A stretch of 64,000 bases of DNA, from the NCBI RefSeq assembly GCF_006345805.1, contig NC_043011.1, positions 64,244,464 to 64,308,463 of the forward strand. The letters are read 5' to 3'. A program made the translations under genes and the position numbers. The notes beneath the pieces are model-generated. The model saw only the letters and a program-made list of their open reading frames with translations, was not told where the DNA came from and made no database searches. Positions 7,005 to 62,974 of this stretch are shown here, piece after piece; position 1 is the stretch's first letter, and the number at the start of each line of letters is the position of its first letter. Source of the stretch: Octopus sinensis. Its lineage: Eukaryota.

Positions 7005-7041
7005 ATGAAAATATTTATAATAAATGCGTTTCTCATTTCAG
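7005..7041 (+). CDS. Gene A exon 1: signal peptide MKIFIINAFLIS(G)
   Basis: ATG at 7005, strong donor G|gtaagt, phase 1; same layout as exon 1 of B and C. Confidence 0.85.
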
Positions 7042-7537
7042 GTAAGTATACAAATATCCTGAAACTTTTTTGACAAACATTTAAACCTACCTCGTAAACT
7101 CCTCTCCTCTTGAAATCTCTCTCTAACTCTTGCAATCGCTTTCATGCTATATATGTAGGCATGACATTTAGAAGAATTCAAAATTAGAAGTAAAACAATT
7201 TCTTTGTTGCTTAATTTGATAACTCAATATGTTGGCACAAATTCATTAACAACTCATGTTTGTCATTTATTTGAAACACTAAGAATCGAATGATTTCCCT
7301 TCAGTGATCATCATTCTTCTGCTTGTCTGGAATCGTAAGCAATTCATATATTGGCAGTTACATCGATATAAAATATACACATGTATATTTGAAGGAATTC
7401 ATACCCGTAATATATATTGTGTTCAAAAGTGTCCAGAGCATAAATGTACATTTTACTAAGGGATGTACATGAAAATTATAACTCATTATTATAAATGTAT
7501 GTTAAAGAATTAAAAATATTCATTTTAACTATTGTAG

Positions 7538-7637
7538 GTGTTATGATGGAGGAAAGTTGTGGTAAACTAGCAGAGAAGACATGCGAGTACCCAGCGCGGA
7601 TGTTCAATAACATTCACTATGAACAAAACTTTTGCAG
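7538..7637 (+). CDS. Gene A exon 2: GVMMEESCGKLAEKTCEYPARMFNNIHYEQNFC(S)
   Basis: ttgtag acceptor, gtacat donor, 100 nt, phase 1 to 2, identical length and Cys spacing to B and C exon 2. Confidence 0.92.
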
Positions 7638-8141
7638 GTACATTGTCATAAATAGTCAAACTGATATTCGGAATACTGCATCGCATGCTTCAACATTCCC
7701 ATATTGGTTACTGAATGTCTCTCTGCCTCTACTATTATCGCTTTCTTTTTCTTACATTCCTTTTCTTCCTTCTTTCTCCCTCACTCCCATCTCTCTGCAT
7801 GTGTAAGTGCGTATCTGTGTATTTGTTGGCGGGCTGATTGCACACGGTCGCCATAGGGATTAGGTCACATTTGATTCGCCTGCGCTGTCATCCCACCTCA
7901 GAGAATATATTATACGAAACATTATTTGTAAGAAATCCTCTCATAACAAAGAAACAAAAACCACCCATTTTTGAATGAGTTAAAAATCGAAATCTATATT
8001 GTGTCAATTCAAACATTTCAGAACGTTTGAGCCTATGCCACATAATGAAAAATATAAACCCATTGTGATCCTCTCCTTATGAATAGCTAAAAAATCACGA
8101 TTCCATCAGCGACGAAGGAAAAAGAACAAAACCAAATGATA

Positions 8142-8541
8142 ATCTTTTCTACTCTAGGCACAAGGCGCAAATAATTGGGGGACGGGGCCAGTCGATTAGA
8201 TAGACCCAAATACGTAACACCTACTTAATTTACCGGACCCCGAAAGGATGAAAGGCAGAGTTGACCCGGCAGAATTTGAACTCAGACCGTAAAGAAAGAG
8301 GAAATTCCTATATCTTTACTACCCACAAGGGGCTAAATGCAAAGAGCCCAAACAAGGACAGACAAACGGAATAAGTCGATTACATCGACCCCAGTGCGTA
8401 ACTGGTACTCAATTTACCGACCCCGAAAGGATCAAAGGCAAAGTCGACATCGGTGGAATTTGAACTCAGAACATGACAGCAGTCGAAATACGGCTTCGCA
8501 TTTCGCCCGGCGTGATAACGTTTCTGCCAGCTCACCGTCTT
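8142..8541 (-). mobile_element. Abundant tRNA-derived SINE
   Basis: Minus head gacggtgagctggcagaaacg...gagttcaaattcc (A/B boxes) with duplicated gtcgat...ggggtcgat body; homologous copies at 9672, 14015, 15338, 16050, 25496, 26820, 49288. Confidence 0.85.
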
Positions 8542-8590
8542 AAGACTAATTAATAACGGACCAGTGCAGTTAGAAAGAACACAAATAACA

Positions 8591-8749
8591 TCTCTGGATC
8601 TTTCCTTTCCCTATGTTACTGACGAAGAGCTCCGCTCGAAACGTTAAACCCTCCTTCTTCCCTTCCTTCCTGAGCGTCCAGTAATACTTTATTTGTTCCA
8701 CGTCCTTGCGTTGTTGTTTTTTCTCTTTGTGTTTTCATGTTTGGATTAA
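8591..8749 (+). mobile_element. Short Penelope-like pseudo-LTR fragment (family also at 16356 and 60736)
   Basis: Three homologous copies in the window, each ending in ...ttaac + (AT)n and carrying a hammerhead-like motif. Confidence 0.65.
8614..8649 (+). ncRNA. Minimal type I hammerhead ribozyme motif
   Basis: CTGACGA (8619-8625), extra A, stem II GAG/CTC, GAAA (8638-8641), palindromic stem III ACGT, H17=U; stem I gtta/aaac has one mismatch. Confidence 0.55.
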
Positions 8750-9322
8750 CTTTATATATATATATATATATATATATATATATATATATATATATATATG
8801 GATGCATGTGTGTAGTCACACACGACGGTCTTCTTTCAGCTTTCACCTAACATGTTCATGCACAATTCTTTACTAGACGTGGGACTCTAATAAAGATACT
8901 TGTCCAGTGTGACACGCAGGGATATTCTATCTGGAACCATGTGGTTGGAAAGTAATCTTCGGAGCACACATCCACATGTATAATATACATACATTACTTC
9001 CGTGCATATGTTAAACTTTTCCACTCTTACGACGTAGTAAATTCCAGTGTCATCTTATTATATAAATGTGATTGCATGTAGTGCAATACCTGTACGCTAT
9101 CGCGTTATGTTTGTCGCGTATCTACAGTATTGCGAAGGAAATGAGTTGATCACACATCTCGTTATTTCTCAAATTTTGCTGTGTTTACGCTTGCCCAACT
9201 GCGTATAGGTGTGTCGTTGTAAACTGAACTTGATCACAGAACATTGTAAATTTTCAAAATCTACAAAACTTTTATATTTAGTTTTTTTAATCTAATATAT
9301 TGATTTTTATTTTGTCTCGCAG

Positions 9323-60010: not shown

Positions 60011-60735
60011 TATATATATATATATATTTATATATATATTTATATATATATATATATATATATATATATATATATTTATATATATATATATATATATATA
60101 TATATATATATATATATATATATATATTATATATATATATATTATATATATATATATATATATATATATATATATATATATATATATATATATATATTAT
60201 ATATATATATATATATATACACATATATATATATATGTGTGTGTGTGTAAATTACAATATGTTACTCATATATGTATATTCTTGTAATTGTCATTTTAGT
60301 AAATAAATAAATAAAGTTGACATAATATAATATCTAAGAGTTGATAAATCACCTTTTGATGCCCACCATTTTCTTATTGCTCTATGAATTAATGGTAAAA
60401 TATCGCTCTACCTTCACCCATTTAGTACATTCGGTAACGTAATTGCAATACAATAAAAAAAATACTTGTGCATTAATAATTGGGTATTCTACCAGCAATA
60501 TATTGGATAGATATTATCCCTTAGTTGTTGAATACACTACCTCTAAATTATATACATACATACACACACACACATATATATATATACATATATGGATAGA
60601 TATATATATATATATAGATAGATAGATAGATAGATAGATAGATAGATAGATAGATAGATAGATAGATAGATAGATAGATAGATAGATAGATAGATAGATA
60701 GATAGATAGATAGATAGATAGATATAGATATACAT

Positions 60736-60945
60736 ATTGATGTGACATCGTGAGTACCGCTGGCGATTATTTTCCTCTGTCTTCTCTTCTCGGGATCTTT
60801 CCTTCTCCTATGTTTCCGACGAAGAACTCCGCTCAAAACGTTAAACCCTCCTTCTTTCCTTCTTTCCTGAGCGTCCAATAATAATATATTTGTTCCACGT
60901 CCTCGCGTTGTTGTGTTTTTTGTGTTTTCTTGTTTGGTTTAACTA
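60736..60945 (+). mobile_element. Short pseudo-LTR fragment with point-mutated hammerhead
   Basis: tgttt-CCGACGA-agaactccgctc-AAAA-cgttaaac; homologous to 8591-8749. Confidence 0.7.
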
Positions 60946-61094
60946 TACATATATATATATATATATATATATATATATATATATATATATATATATTGTG
61001 TACGTGTGTATGTGTGCGTGTGTGTACTTGTCTCTCTATACGTGCCTATGTATCGGTATATGTACGTTATTTAAACGATATTTTTTAATTTCAG

Positions 61095-61127
61095 CTTAAT
61101 AACGGAGCAGATATCAACAGAGATATG
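61095..61127 (+). CDS. Gene C exon 4: LNNGADINRDM (putative omega-site linker)
   Basis: taatttcag acceptor, ATG|gtaggt donor, phase 0-0. Confidence 0.85.
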
Positions 61128-61614
61128 GTAGGTAGCACGAATGTAAAGTATTGTTAATATTTCACTGATATGCTAGGGCAGAGCAGGTGTAGTTTTTCAA
61201 CGATAAGTCTAGGTTATCACCGAAGAATCATCTCAATATCTCCTCCAGATTTGGTAATACTAATAGGTGCAATTTGAGTAGCATTTTCCTTCATAATTTT
61301 CACGTATACCTTTCGTAATATTATAGCAGTAAATACATTGCTAACACTAAAAATAAGATTAATAACTTTGAAATATGTATATGAATCATGTATTTGAAAA
61401 GATATGCACCAGGTAACGTTGGATAATCTCTGTGGTTCCAGCGTATAGTTGGTAAGTATTGAAATATCGGATATGATGTTTCGGTTGTGTTTACAGAAAG
61501 ATTCAACTCTATGAGTATTTAGCTGGTACGCGTTACATTGAGAAATACGGTGTTGGTATACACTAATGCATCCGACAAGTCCTAAAAAGCCTTTGTCTAT
61601 TATAATTAAATGAA

Positions 61615-62875
61615 TAATAACATACGATCGACGATTATCAGCTCATTACAGCTGTTTCTTAAGTAAAATTACACAGAATAAGAACATTACATCATTATAA
61701 AACACCGTAATCATCAGATGAGAAGTTATTTAAAAAAAAAACATAAAACTATCCAAAGACTACAGCAGGGATGTGGTTAGACTCTGTCGAGACCAAATAT
61801 GAAACGTTAGAATGAACCAATAGGATAGCAGTTTGTATTAACAACGTAGTTCTTTAAAGCGTGTAATCTGATATCTAAGGTCAGTGACCCGGGTGAGAGG
61901 AAGTCTGCTAGCCTGGGGCTTAGGATGACTGGAGTGATGCGGTAGGAAATTATTTATTTCGGTAGGCTTGGAGTAGCGGTATGTAATTGAGAGGTCATAA
62001 AACAATGAAGGGTACGGGAAAAAGCAATGATAAATAAACCAAAACGTAAGGGTGAAGGAAAAATACAAATACAAAACTAAAGTCATACACGTTTAACATT
62101 CCGTATAGTTTATCATTGGACTACTCCGTACTGCTGGCTTTACTTGATATATGACCTGCTATTTCCTTAAACTCCGTATAAAGTGTAGTTCATTATATAA
62201 TACCATAATTAAAAATAAAATCTAAGCTCCCTATTCATAGGTGGCGCTCTATTCTAATACAACTTCAATTCCATAAATATTCGATCTGATTATTTGATGG
62301 CCTTGGTATCCGCCCCTAATTGCAACCGACTTCCATTGAATACCCCTAAATTTCTGTTGCTCTGTCCCCCTCTTCTGGTCATTACCTTTAGCTAGATTTT
62401 CTTATACCCCTTATAGTATACTTTTATTTTTATTTTTCGTTCACCCTAACATTTCATTTATTTATGATTCTCCCCCACCCCGTATCCTTGTTTTATGACT
62501 TCTCCATTACACCACACTATTCCAAGCCTGCAATAATAAATTATCTATTAGCCCCACTCCAGTCAGCCAATCTTCTAGGCTATCAGACTCCTTCTCACCC
62601 CAATAACTCACGTTAGATATCAGATTACACACTTCCAAGAACTATTTTCTCAGCGTAAACGGCCAACATGGTCGTCTTTATCCCTTTTCCCATTTGGCAA
62701 CGACAGGCTCTAGCTACATTCCTGCCGTAATCCTGAGATATTCTTTTGTTAAGTAAAATTATTCTTCATCTTGCGATCACTGTCTTTTACGATGATGTAA
62801 TTCTCCCATTCTTCTATTTAACGTTACCTCAGAAACAGTTACAGTGAGTTGACAATTATCCATCATATGTTACGT
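61615..62875. mobile_element. Old inverted pseudo-LTR pair (~475-bp arms)
   Basis: 61615-62090 aligns with the reverse complement of 62400-62875 at roughly 70% by eye. Confidence 0.75.
61642..61722 (-). ncRNA. Type I hammerhead motif with weak stem II
   Basis: CTCAT/ATGAG stem I, CTGATGA, TTA/TAA stem II, GAAA, palindromic ACAGCTGT stem III, GUA triplet. Confidence 0.55.
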
Positions 62876-62914
62876 AATATATTATATATCTAACATGTCA
62901 TATCCTCTTTGCAG

Positions 62915-62974
62915 GTCAGGCTGGAAACATTGTTGGCCTTTGCATTTGTCACTCAATTAATGATAAGGAAATAA
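62915..62974 (+). CDS. Gene C exon 5: VRLETLLAFAFVTQLMIRK* (hydrophobic tail)
   Basis: tcctctttgcag acceptor; 19 codons + TAA; AATAAA at 62970-62975. Confidence 0.85.
   Translation, partial: VRLETLLAFAFVTQLMIRK

What the first reader, a model, noticed from the sequence alone, without database searches (positions are those of the whole stretch)
7005..62974. Hidden tandem array of three small, six-cysteine, signal-peptide genes with anchor-like tails
Seen: three + strand gene models with canonical splice sites and identical exon 2 (100 nt, phase 1-2) and exon 3 (88 nt, phase 2-0). A (107 aa): MKIFIINAFLISGVMMEESCGKLAEKTCEYPARMFNNIHYEQNFCSTFLDFSPCLMGISIICDEFYKSFFYEKCLKSAAAKISTAPQKVTMECFLVIAVTIKLLIHM. 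B (111 aa, with read-through): MKIIAIFVLVLTFGVAISEDCNVWAQRNCGVSASYFFSLDSDKRFCRLMEEKKACLYIKVNSCNKFFDFFKYHKCKLRNRTDINGDTACSFQCNILLIFHHYARAGVGFHQ. C (105 aa): MKITLFALLLMFGVAVSDDCSRLAEERCRLSRKYFYTLHHQYRFCRLLRRYRVCLFGISDECFAYFRFYHYYKCVLNNGADINRDMVRLETLLAFAFVTQLMIRK. All share C-x7-C-x16-C-x8-C-x7-C-x11-C plus a few invariant residues (A at C1+4, F at C2+7, F before C3, L after C4, Y at C5+9, K before C6), at only ~28-39% pairwise identity over exons 2-3. Inference: a lineage-restricted family of small disulfide-bonded, probably helical surface or secreted proteins, with a recognition role (gamete, immune, chemosensory) or a toxin-like role. I do not recognise the family; a distant link to helical DUF19/DUF1397-type Cys domains is only a hypothesis.
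Basis: partly seen in the sequence, partly recalled or inferred. Interest (0 to 1): 0.95.

Follow-up and report, generated by a model that had tools for sequence, protein, structure and literature searches.

The report
Octopus-only six-cysteine secreted gene cluster
Three real but unannotated small genes sit in a row in this octopus DNA; they belong to an uncharacterised, fast-evolving, octopus-only family of secreted or probably lipid-anchored three-helix proteins, which is a moderately interesting find for cephalopod biology.

Summary
All three + strand gene models exist exactly as written, with GT-AG at every junction, 100-nt and 88-nt core exons, and an ungapped C-x7-C-x16-C-x8-C-x7-C-x11-C framework.

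The window is 94-98% identical to Octopus vulgaris chromosome OX597831.1. There the only annotated model is a chimera that fuses A and B.

An exhaustive HMMER search of 1.84 billion proteins found only octopus relatives. These are O. bimaculoides RefSeq "uncharacterized proteins" LOC128249835 and LOC128249866, which lie in a cluster of at least six copies. All eight complete copies keep the same cysteine spacing at 21-42% identity. Unconstrained drift would do this with probability about 2e-5 or less.

AlphaFold predicts a three-helix domain (pLDDT 76). A and C end in a small-residue spacer plus a 13-15-residue hydrophobic tail that looks like a GPI signal. B is a 3'-truncated duplicate without that tail.

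The genes share a promoter motif, ACATCTGTTACAAT, and most stop codons are embedded in AATAAA.

No Pfam family is matched at threshold, and DUF19/DUF1397 give nothing. The only recurring weak hit is the RGM N-terminal domain (E 0.009-0.03), which is a lead, not membership. Function is untested; no expression data could be consulted.

The parts
6924..6937 (+). Gene A promoter-proximal motif ACATCTGTTACAAT (contains E-box CATCTG), 81 nt upstream of the ATG
   Evidence: Aligned and conserved upstream of 8 family genes in 3 genomes. The exact 11-mer occurs only twice in the window, both times at family promoters.
7005..7041 (+). Gene A exon 1: MKIFIINAFLIS + 1 nt, the signal-peptide hydrophobic core, ending in a phase-1 donor CAG|GTAAGT
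7538..7637 (+). Gene A exon 2 (100 nt): Cys1-Cys3, predicted helix 1 and the start of helix 2
   Evidence: The same boundaries are used by the O. vulgaris model P0001.
9323..9410 (+). Gene A exon 3 (88 nt): Cys4-Cys6, predicted helices 2-3
16762..16800 (+). Gene A exon 4 (39 nt): spacer KSAAAKISTAPQK rich in small residues; candidate GPI omega-site region
   Evidence: omega-site reading is inference from the sequence
17968..18027 (+). Gene A exon 5: VTMECFLVIAVTIKLLIHM + stop, the hydrophobic C-terminal tail. AATAAA at 18027-18032 overlaps the stop.
   Evidence: KD(11) 2.77
21973..21986 (+). Gene B promoter motif variant ACATATGTCACAAT, 92 nt upstream of the ATG
22065..22104 (+). Gene B exon 1 (40 nt): MKIIAIFVLVLTF + 1 nt
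26665..26764 (+). Gene B exon 2 (100 nt)
29229..29316 (+). Gene B exon 3 (88 nt)
44160..44267 (+). Gene B terminal exon. It is homologous to exon 4 of C, but the donor is lost and it reads through for 36 codons to a TAA embedded in AATAAA (44263-44268). There is no exon 5, so B is a 3'-truncated duplicate.
   Evidence: All 3 differences from O. vulgaris in this exon are non-synonymous, which looks like neutral drift.
45799..45812 (+). Gene C promoter motif ACATCTGTTACAAT, 93 nt upstream of the ATG
45892..45928 (+). Gene C exon 1 (37 nt): MKITLFALLLMF + 1 nt
49135..49234 (+). Gene C exon 2 (100 nt)
57551..57638 (+). Gene C exon 3 (88 nt)
61095..61127 (+). Gene C exon 4 (33 nt): LNNGADINRDM, with the candidate omega-site triplet N-G-A
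   Evidence: omega-site reading is inference
62915..62974 (+). Gene C exon 5: VRLETLLAFAFVTQLMIRK + stop, the hydrophobic tail. AATAAA at 62970-62975 overlaps the stop.
21384..26993 (+). 5' part of the B duplication unit (upstream region, exon 1, intron 1, exon 2). It is colinear with 45034-49452 of C at 64-75% nucleotide identity.
44380..45034 (.). Junction between the B and C duplication units. B's homology to C ends about 220 bp into what is intron 4 in C. A (TAG)n microsatellite lies at 44477-44686.

Best explanation
The window carries three intact, tandem, same-strand members of a protein family found so far only in Octopus. The window is from an O. vulgaris-complex genome.

Gene anatomy (shown):
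- Exon 1 encodes a short signal-peptide core and ends in a phase-1 intron.
- Exons 2 and 3 encode a 56-residue core with six framework cysteines.
- In A and C, exon 4 encodes a short spacer rich in small residues.
- In A and C, exon 5 encodes a 13-15-residue hydrophobic C-terminus. Its stop codon sits inside the polyadenylation hexamer.

Inferred: the core folds as a three-helix bundle with two cysteines per helix, locked by three disulfides. The protein enters the secretory pathway. A and C are transferred to a GPI anchor and displayed on the outer leaflet. B lost exon 5 at the duplication junction, so, like O. bimaculoides LOC128249835, it would be released as a soluble protein or is drifting towards a pseudogene.

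Shown: the scaffold (cysteines, spacing, one Phe, splice phases) is under strong constraint while the rest of the surface changes almost as fast as intron DNA. The cluster also gains and loses members between species.

Inferred: this is the signature of an extracellular binding or recognition module whose partners change. A conserved E-box-containing element about 80-90 nt upstream of every ATG suggests the paralogues are switched on together in one cell type.
For: Gene models:
- GT-AG at every junction and conserved exon sizes and phases.
- The same exon 2/3 boundaries are used independently by the O. vulgaris annotation.
- NCBI models of O. bimaculoides paralogues have the same layout, including isoforms with and without exon 4.

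Constraint:
- Eight complete copies share the spacing 7,16,8,7,11 without indels at 21-42% identity.
- A neutral simulation gives P <= 2e-5 for keeping the six cysteines with no stop.
- Exons 1-3 differ at 1 of 490 nt from O. vulgaris, against 54 of 3014 in the flanks (Fisher p = 0.002).

Fast surface evolution:
- B-C dN/dS is about 1.3 at dS 0.43.
- In the positional orthologues X/Ob5, exon 2 is 82% identical while the adjacent intron is 84-90% identical.

Fold: AF2 on 5 sequences gives pLDDT 76, with main helices at 7-16, 29-43 and 48-67. The full-length C model is also helical.

Targeting: N-terminal KD(9) is 2.5-3.8. C-terminal KD(11) is 2.1-2.8 in A, C and Ob4, against 0.26 in Ob2. Small-residue triplets (S-T-A, N-G-A, A-S-T, N-G-G) lie 9-13 residues before the hydrophobic stretch (sequence).

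Lineage restriction: only Octopus proteins among 1.84e9 representatives and 5.8e9 clusters.

Shared regulation: the promoter motif correctly predicted a sixth O. bimaculoides exon 1. The stop codon overlaps AATAAA in A, B, C, Ob4 and Ob5.
Against: - No transcript or protein evidence could be consulted for the window genes.
- None of the three is present as an annotated or assembled protein in the 15-billion-protein collection.
- Signal peptide and GPI signal were judged by hydropathy and by eye, not by SignalP or NetGPI. The hydrophobic tails are short and contain K or Q.
- The AF2 models are of moderate confidence and rest on very shallow alignments. Foldseek found no PDB neighbour, so the fold is not corroborated.
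- dN/dS of about 1 is also what relaxed constraint gives. It is not significantly above 1, with only about 35 synonymous sites.
- B's tail evolves like neutral DNA.
Confidence: 0.6

Rival explanations
1. The family is a stand-alone derivative of the RGM (repulsive guidance molecule) N-terminal domain. In vertebrates that domain is a three-helix, three-disulfide module of a GPI-anchored protein that binds BMP/GDF ligands. The octopus proteins would then be miniature GPI-anchored or soluble co-receptors or decoys for TGF-beta-family ligands.
For: - RGM_N (PF06535) is the only recurring Pfam hit: Ob5 E 0.009 (residues 6-50 to profile positions 4-46), Ob2 E 0.032, family consensus E 0.025.
- The family profile picks RGMB N-domain chains as its only PDB hits (E 0.23), in the same register: DSEFCKALRAYAGCTQRTSKAC against d.eFCrllr....CLygis..C.
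- hhalign against RGMA/B/C gives P 4.4e-4, whereas the neuritin control gives P 0.12.
- With the RGMB cysteines held fixed and all other residues shuffled, only 4 of 3000 shuffles reach the real score.
- The C3-x8-C4-x7-C5 spacing is identical in both.
Against: - All scores are below Pfam's gathering cut-off (at most 16.7 bits against 24.2).
- The match covers only about 23-26 residues, around helix 2.
- hhalign probability is 33%.
- The three window proteins themselves give no hit.
- Single-sequence PDB searches give only noise.
- Foldseek of both models finds no RGM.
- The outer spacings differ: x4/x22/x22 in RGM against x7/x16/x11 here.
[quoted passage not shown] Here it is half as long and shows no similarity.
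- There is no von Willebrand-type C-terminal domain.
- RGM_N was picked post hoc as the best of 24,736 families.
Confidence: 0.17
2. The proteins are secreted effectors rather than cell-surface modules. They could be a venom or salivary toxin, an antimicrobial peptide, or a waterborne or contact pheromone or gamete-recognition factor. The C-terminal hydrophobic segment would then be a propeptide or membrane-active helix.
For: - The signal peptide and promoter are conserved while the mature region is hypervariable.
- The family shows tandem birth-and-death and dN/dS of about 1 or more. This is the pattern of many toxin, defence and reproductive families (general knowledge).
- Net charge of the core ranges from -4 (A) to +6 (C).
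- Two members lack the tail altogether (B, Ob2).
- Small helical three-disulfide pheromones exist in Aplysia (attractin) and Euplotes (my knowledge).
Against: - Four of six known tails have the spacer-plus-hydrophobic-end layout, which is encoded by its own conserved exons. That layout is unusual for toxins or pheromones.
- There is no similarity to any toxin, antimicrobial-peptide or pheromone family in Pfam or the PDB.
- The cysteine spacing differs from attractin, CHH/ITP and saposins (my knowledge).
- No tissue data are available.
Confidence: 0.15
3. The models are not functional genes. They would be decaying relics or chance ORFs that gene predictors and the first reader stitched together.
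For: - They are unannotated in the source genome and mis-joined in O. vulgaris.
- No Pfam domain is matched.
- Coding exons are no more conserved than introns between B and C.
- B has lost its last exon, and its tail drifts.
Against: - Retaining the ORF, six cysteines, exact spacing and all splice sites in eight paralogues at 21-42% identity has probability 2e-5 or less per pair under drift.
- Exons 1-3 are about 9-fold less diverged than their flanks between the window and O. vulgaris.
- The promoter motif and polyA-in-stop are conserved.
- NCBI models with two isoforms exist in O. bimaculoides.
- At most this reading could apply to B alone.
Confidence: 0.04

Closest known systems
O. bimaculoides RefSeq 'uncharacterized protein' LOC128249835 (XP_052830339.1) and LOC128249866 (XP_052830368.1 / XP_052830370.1); O. 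vulgaris CAI9735837.1
   Same: True family members. They share the signal exon, the cysteine spacing 7,16,8,7,11, the exon phases, the spacer-plus-hydrophobic-tail layout (LOC128249866) or a soluble end (LOC128249835), the promoter motif and the tandem cluster.
   Different: They are only 30-42% identical to A, B and C, and there is no colinear non-coding DNA, so they are not one-to-one orthologues. CAI9735837.1 is a chimera of A exons 2-3 and B exons 2-3, with B exon 2 out of frame. None has a described function or a literature mention.
RGM N-terminal domain (Pfam PF06535; PDB 4UHZ chain B, RGMB)
   Same: A small extracellular three-helix domain with six cysteines and three disulfides in a GPI-anchored protein. 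It has the identical C-x8-C-x7-C spacing and a D-x-E-F-C-x-x-L-R motif at helix 2, and gives weak but reproducible profile hits.
   Different: Scores are below threshold. The outer cysteine spacings differ and helix 3 is shorter. There is no RGD or von Willebrand-type domain and no autocleavage site. Structure search gave no support.
Neuritin / CPG15 (Pfam PF15056)
   Same: The same overall architecture: signal peptide, a single six-cysteine domain of about 60-85 residues, and a GPI signal. The central spacing x8, x7 is also the same (sequence recalled from memory and checked against Pfam).
   Different: There is no detectable sequence relationship: hhalign P 0.12 in the wrong register and no Pfam hit. 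The outer loops of neuritin are much longer.
Ly6/uPAR ('three-finger') small GPI-anchored and secreted proteins
   Same: The same logic: tiny disulfide-rich extracellular modules. Some are GPI-anchored and some soluble, they are encoded in tandem arrays with a signal-peptide exon and a separate GPI-signal exon, and they evolve fast (general knowledge).
   Different: They have a beta-rich three-finger fold with 8-10 cysteines. This is an analogue only, not a relative.
   Same: Helical, cysteine-rich extracellular domains of invertebrates.
   Different: No hit for any family member or the consensus at E<=10. By contrast, neuritin does graze DUF19 (E 0.009).

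Membership tests
Octopus six-Cys family (LOC128249835 / LOC128249866 type) | Significant sequence similarity to the named members | tested here: met
   phmmer with P0001 (which carries the A domain) against 1.84e9 proteins gave P0003 at E 2.7e-7 and P0004 at E 1.7e-5. The profile of A+B+C+P0003+P0004 re-finds them at E 1e-28 to 1e-33.
Octopus six-Cys family (LOC128249835 / LOC128249866 type) | Framework C-x7-C-x16-C-x8-C-x7-C-x11-C without indels | tested here: met
   Identical in A, B, C and Ob1-Ob5.
Octopus six-Cys family (LOC128249835 / LOC128249866 type) | Gene layout: 37-40-nt signal exon (phase 1), 97-100-nt exon, 88-nt exon (phase 0), then a short spacer exon and a tail exon | tested here: met
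   B and Ob2 lack the tail exon.
RGM_N (PF06535) | Score at or above Pfam's gathering cut-off (24.2 bits) | tested here: not met
   Best 16.7 bits (Ob5), then 15.2 (consensus) and 14.9 (Ob2). A, B and C give no hit.
RGM_N (PF06535) | Three-helix bundle stabilised by three disulfides | tested here: inconclusive
   AF2 predicts three main helices with two Cys each. Coordinates and disulfide pairing could not be inspected, and Foldseek found no PDB match.
RGM_N (PF06535) | Cysteine spacing C-x4-C-x22-C-x8-C-x7-C-x22-C (human RGMB) | tested here: not met
   Only the central x8, x7 agree. The outer spacings are x7, x16 and x11.
RGM_N (PF06535) | Followed by a von Willebrand-type domain with an autocleavage site, then a GPI signal | tested here: not met
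   The proteins end 25-36 residues after Cys6. Only a GPI-like tail is present.
RGM_N (PF06535) | Binds BMP/GDF ligands through helix 3 | not testable with these tools
   Helix 3 shows no sequence similarity to RGM helix 3.
Neuritin (PF15056) | Pfam or profile-profile similarity | tested here: not met
   No Pfam hit; hhalign P 0.12.
DUF19 / DUF1397 | Pfam similarity | tested here: not met
   No hit at E<=10.
GPI-anchored proteins (as a class) | N-terminal signal peptide, plus a C-terminal signal made of a small omega / omega+2 site, a polar spacer of about 6-10 residues and a hydrophobic end | tested here: inconclusive
   The layout is present by eye and by hydropathy in A, C, Ob4 and Ob5, and absent in B and Ob2. 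No dedicated predictor or experiment was available.

The most novel reading that the evidence does not exclude
Octopuses have evolved a rapidly diversifying cluster of stand-alone, GPI-anchored or soluble RGM-N-like three-helix modules. These would be miniature co-receptors or decoys for TGF-beta/BMP-family or other secreted ligands, switched on together by a bHLH-type E-box in one (possibly neural or sensory) cell type. That would be a lineage-specific layer of extracellular signalling control not described in any animal.
Probability: 0.1. Interest if true: 0.75.

Novelty: new variant of a known kind. Interest (0 to 1): 0.45.

Why it matters
Cephalopod genomes are known for lineage-specific gene families whose roles in the nervous system, suckers and skin are mostly unknown. 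This finding adds a clean, testable example.

- It is a compact family with a fixed disulfide scaffold and hypervariable surfaces.
- It has anchored and soluble forms.
- It has a family-specific promoter element that can itself be used to find further members.
- It shows an annotation gap: the three genes are missing in this genome and fused into a chimera in O. vulgaris.

If the weak RGM-N resemblance proves real, the family would show how one domain of a conserved guidance and BMP co-receptor can be released as an independent, fast-evolving module. If it does not, the family is still a new small helical disulfide fold candidate with no solved relative. In practice, the corrected gene models should be added to octopus annotations so that single-cell and proteomic atlases can detect them.

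Tried and rejected
1. Pfam on A, B and C gave nothing at E<=10.
2. A word-indexed search of 5.8e9 proteins with C alone gave nothing. Adding A and B found only the O. vulgaris chimera.
P0001, which contains the whole A domain, was used instead.
4. MAFFT of exon fragments against P0001, meant to smuggle in a profile, misaligned and was dropped.
6. Foldseek of both models against the PDB gave no meaningful match.
7. Neuritin was considered because it has the same architecture and the same x8, x7 spacing. It was rejected on hhalign.
8. DUF19/DUF1397 were rejected, and DUF7952 appeared once at E 0.08. One chance-level hit (E 0.11) to an unrelated toxin-domain family was ignored.
9. Global pairwise identity of B and C exon flanks was uninformative, because the shuffle baseline was 72% with that scoring. 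blastn HSP identities were used instead.
10. P0002 (1151 aa, internally repetitive) from the HMMER search is a spurious low-complexity hit.
12. A motif copy at 36144 has no exon 1 behind it.
13. Rfam and tRNA scans of the window were empty.
14. Literature searches for the accession numbers and for octopus cysteine-rich or GPI families found nothing on this family.

Full report
WHAT IS THERE

After fixing exact boundaries, the three coding sequences translate to exactly the 107-, 111- and 105-residue proteins given.

Every intron starts with GT and ends with AG. Donors are close to consensus (CAG|GTAAGT, TTG|GTAAGT, AAG|GTAAGA) and acceptors follow pyrimidine tracts. In all three genes:
- Exon 1 (37-40 nt) is 'MK' plus 10-11 hydrophobic residues and ends in phase 1.
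- Exon 2 is 100 nt.
- Exon 3 is 88 nt and ends in phase 0.

The mature region aligns without a gap, with the spacing C-x7-C-x16-C-x8-C-x7-C-x11-C.

Paralogous exons detect each other far above chance: tblastn B exon 2 to C exon 2 gives E 3e-10, and C exon 2 to A exon 2 gives E 9e-7. Exon HMMs find exactly three copies in the 64 kb.

B and C are a tandem duplication that includes non-coding DNA. The stretch 21384-26993 is colinear with 45034-49452 at 64-75% identity, and 44004-44380 is colinear with 60944-61322. B's homology stops about 220 bp after the start of exon 4. C's upstream homology starts about 650 bp further on. No exon-5-like sequence lies between them. B is therefore a 3'-truncated copy. 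Its exon-4 donor is gone and the frame runs on for 36 codons.

WHERE THE WINDOW COMES FROM AND WHAT IS ANNOTATED

The window is AT-rich (about 35% G+C) and full of microsatellites. A profile of A+B+C found one protein among 5.8 billion clusters, the O. vulgaris protein CAI9735837.1 (P0001).

Its locus is chromosome OX597831.1 at 16.54-16.59 Mb (L001). That locus is colinear with window 48-47190 at about 94-98% identity in most blocks. The window is therefore from a very close relative, probably O. sinensis or another O. vulgaris-complex genome. That last step is my inference.

P0001 is a chimera. It joins an upstream exon, A exons 2 and 3 (with exactly my boundaries), B exon 2 read out of frame, B exon 3 and a further piece. 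None of A, B or C exists as a protein in the collection. 'Hidden' is thus fair for this genome.

THE FAMILY

P0001 contains the complete A domain, so it could be used for the exhaustive HMMER scan of 1.84 billion representatives. Apart from itself and one repetitive false hit, that scan found two proteins:
- P0003, 92 aa, E 2.7e-7.
- P0004, 100 aa, E 1.7e-5.

These are O. bimaculoides RefSeq 'uncharacterized protein' LOC128249866 isoform X2 and LOC128249835. Isoform X1 of the former (P0005, 108 aa) contains an extra spacer exon.

Both genes lie about 30 kb apart on chromosome CM046618.1. Exon HMMs, tblastn and an exon-1 pattern show at least six family genes in those 55 kb:
- Ob1.
- Ob2, which is LOC128249835.
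- A gene whose exon 1 starts at L002 22762.
- Ob3.
- Ob4, which is LOC128249866.
- Ob5, a minus-strand gene with a 104-aa product.

In O. vulgaris a fourth member (X) lies about 3 kb upstream of the window start, on the minus strand (L001 exon 1 at 5106, exon 2 near 298). Its exon 2 is 70% identical to Ob5, and its introns are colinear with those of Ob5 at 80-84%.

A, B and C have no such colinear partner among Ob1-Ob4. Only a dispersed repeat is shared. So most members turn over or diverge quickly, while X/Ob5 is the stable one.

ARE THEY UNDER SELECTION?

All eight complete copies keep the spacing 7,16,8,7,11 with no indel at 21-42% identity. Across the eight, only the six cysteines and one Phe are invariant.

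I simulated unconstrained substitution at the observed nucleotide divergence. All six cysteines were retained with no stop in 2e-5 of trials for B-C and in none of 1e5 trials for A-B and A-C.

Between the window and O. vulgaris, exons 1-3 differ at 1 of 490 positions, against 54 of 3014 in the 150-bp flanks (Fisher p 0.002). B's read-through tail has 3 differences in 108 nt, all non-synonymous.

Non-cysteine positions, by contrast, change very fast:
- B-C dN/dS is 1.3 at dS 0.43.
- Exon 1 and the promoter are better conserved than the mature exons.
- In the orthologous pair X/Ob5, exon 2 (82% identical) is no better conserved than the adjacent intron (84-90%).

With so few synonymous sites this cannot be called positive selection. 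It does show the classic 'fixed scaffold, hypervariable surface' pattern.

WHAT THE PROTEIN LOOKS LIKE

AlphaFold2 on full-length C with 3 sequences gave an all-helical model of low confidence (pLDDT 64). On the mature domain of P0004 with 5 sequences it gave pLDDT 76 and pTM 0.59. The main helices in that model are:
- Residues 7-16, containing Cys1 and Cys2.
- Residues 29-43, containing Cys3 and Cys4.
- Residues 48-67, containing Cys5 and Cys6.

Two cysteines per helix in a three-helix bundle fits three interhelical disulfides. I could not inspect the coordinates. Foldseek against the PDB returned nothing useful for either model.

The N-termini have signal-type hydrophobic cores (KD(9) 2.5-3.8). 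After Cys6 the members divide into two groups:
- A, C, Ob4 and Ob5 have a 10-16-residue spacer containing a triplet of small residues (S-T-A, N-G-A, A-S-T, N-G-G). This is followed 9-13 residues later by a 12-15-residue hydrophobic end encoded by its own exon. That is the layout of a GPI-attachment signal. Established knowledge of such signals supports this reading, but no predictor was available.
- Ob2 has a hydrophilic end, and B's tail is only weakly hydrophobic (C-terminal KD(11) 1.76). Both lack the spacer-plus-tail-exon layout, so they would be secreted.

Core net charge ranges from -4 to +6, and aromatic residues make up 16-23%.

REGULATORY ANATOMY (noticed here)

Aligning 150 nt upstream of eight family ATGs revealed a block, ACATCTGTTACAAT, about 75-95 nt upstream of the ATG. 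It is otherwise surrounded by unalignable DNA. B has ACATATGTCACAAT and X has ACATGTGTTGCC.

The exact 11-mer CATCTGTTACA occurs only twice in the window, both times at these promoters. In the O. bimaculoides loci it marks Ob1-Ob4, and it led to a sixth gene's exon 1. The block contains a CATCTG E-box. That this is a bHLH site is my inference.

The stop codon of A, B, C, Ob4 and Ob5 overlaps or abuts AATAAA, which implies very short 3' UTRs. Both features argue for real, co-regulated transcription units.

COMPARISON WITH KNOWN FAMILIES

No Pfam family is matched at threshold by any member.

The one recurring sub-threshold hit is the RGM N-terminal domain (PF06535):
- Ob5 gives E 0.009, Ob2 gives E 0.032 and the family consensus gives E 0.025.
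- RGMB N-domain chains are the only PDB hits of the family profile, at E 0.23.
- hhalign against RGMA/B/C gives P 4.4e-4 with probability 33%.
- A control that keeps RGMB's cysteines fixed and shuffles the rest reaches the real score in 4 of 3000 trials.

RGM-ND is a three-helix, three-disulfide BMP/GDF-binding domain of GPI-anchored proteins (PMC7354924), so the resemblance is intriguing. However, it is confined to about 25 residues around helix 2. The outer cysteine spacings differ. Helix 3, the heart of the RGM-ligand interface, is unrelated. A, B and C themselves give no hit, and the structure search is silent. I rate true homology at roughly one in five and do not file the family under RGM_N.

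Neuritin/CPG15 has the same architecture and the same central spacing but no detectable sequence relationship. Ly6/uPAR proteins are a functional analogue only.

VERDICT

They belong to an undescribed, Octopus-restricted, tandemly arrayed family of small secreted or probably GPI-anchored three-helix disulfide proteins with fast-evolving surfaces.

The most likely mode of action is as an extracellular binding or recognition module. What it binds is unknown. No literature mentions these genes.

This is a sound, moderately interesting annotation and gene-family discovery rather than a categorical novelty. Expression data and a fold or disulfide determination are the decisive missing pieces.

Noticed in passing
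window 6924-6937, 21973-21986, 45799-45812; L002 2708, 9923, 22675; L003 3600, 9925: A family-specific promoter-proximal motif, ACATCTGTTACAAT (E-box CATCTG), lies about 75-95 nt upstream of each ATG. It is conserved where all surrounding DNA is unalignable. It predicted a previously unseen sixth O. bimaculoides member (exon 1 at L002 22762, MRIYSFIFLLVI).
   Followed up: partly
window 18025-18032, 44263-44268, 62970-62975; L003 about 15131 and about 18315: The stop codon of A, B, C, Ob4 and Ob5 is embedded in or abuts the polyadenylation hexamer AATAAA. This implies extremely short 3' UTRs. Ob2 lacks this feature.
   Followed up: partly
L001 5106 (exon 1) and about 298 (exon 2), minus strand; about 3 kb upstream of window position 1: A fourth family member (X) lies just outside the window in O. 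vulgaris, transcribed divergently from A. It is the positional orthologue of the O. bimaculoides minus-strand gene Ob5 and is the slowest-evolving member.
   Followed up: partly
L001 10001-45208 (roughly window 1700-36700): The only O. vulgaris gene model here (CAI9735837.1) is a chimera that fuses A exons 2-3 to B exons 2-3, with B exon 2 out of frame. It is an annotation error worth correcting.
   Followed up: yes
window 30099-33710, minus strand (inside intron 3 of B): A degraded LINE-type retrotransposon. Its reverse-transcriptase (RVT_1) ORFs are split over several frames, and it largely accounts for the 14.8-kb length of this intron.
   Followed up: partly
window 20239-20688, minus strand: A mariner-type transposase fragment (Pfam Transposase_1, E 4e-6) lies between genes A and B.
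   Followed up: partly
window 8139-8543, 9827-10076, 14015-14230, 15336-15730, 25481-25705, 26875-26997: A dispersed repeat of about 170-400 bp (SINE-like) is present in both orientations in the introns of A and B, and many times in the O. bimaculoides loci at 72-88% identity.
   Followed up: no
window 10440-11061 and 11485-12104: A large inverted duplication lies in intron 3 of A. The two arms encode the same low-complexity ORF on opposite strands and map to inverted positions in O. vulgaris.
   Followed up: no
window 44380-45034: The junction of the B and C duplication units carries a 70-copy (TAG)n microsatellite (44477-44686). The breakpoint inside the ancestral intron 4 explains B's missing tail exon.
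   Followed up: partly
L003 10001-15133: O. bimaculoides LOC128249866 has two annotated isoforms that differ by the spacer exon (108 and 92 aa). Skipping it removes the candidate GPI omega-site while keeping the hydrophobic tail, which could act as a switch between anchored and non-anchored forms.
   Followed up: no
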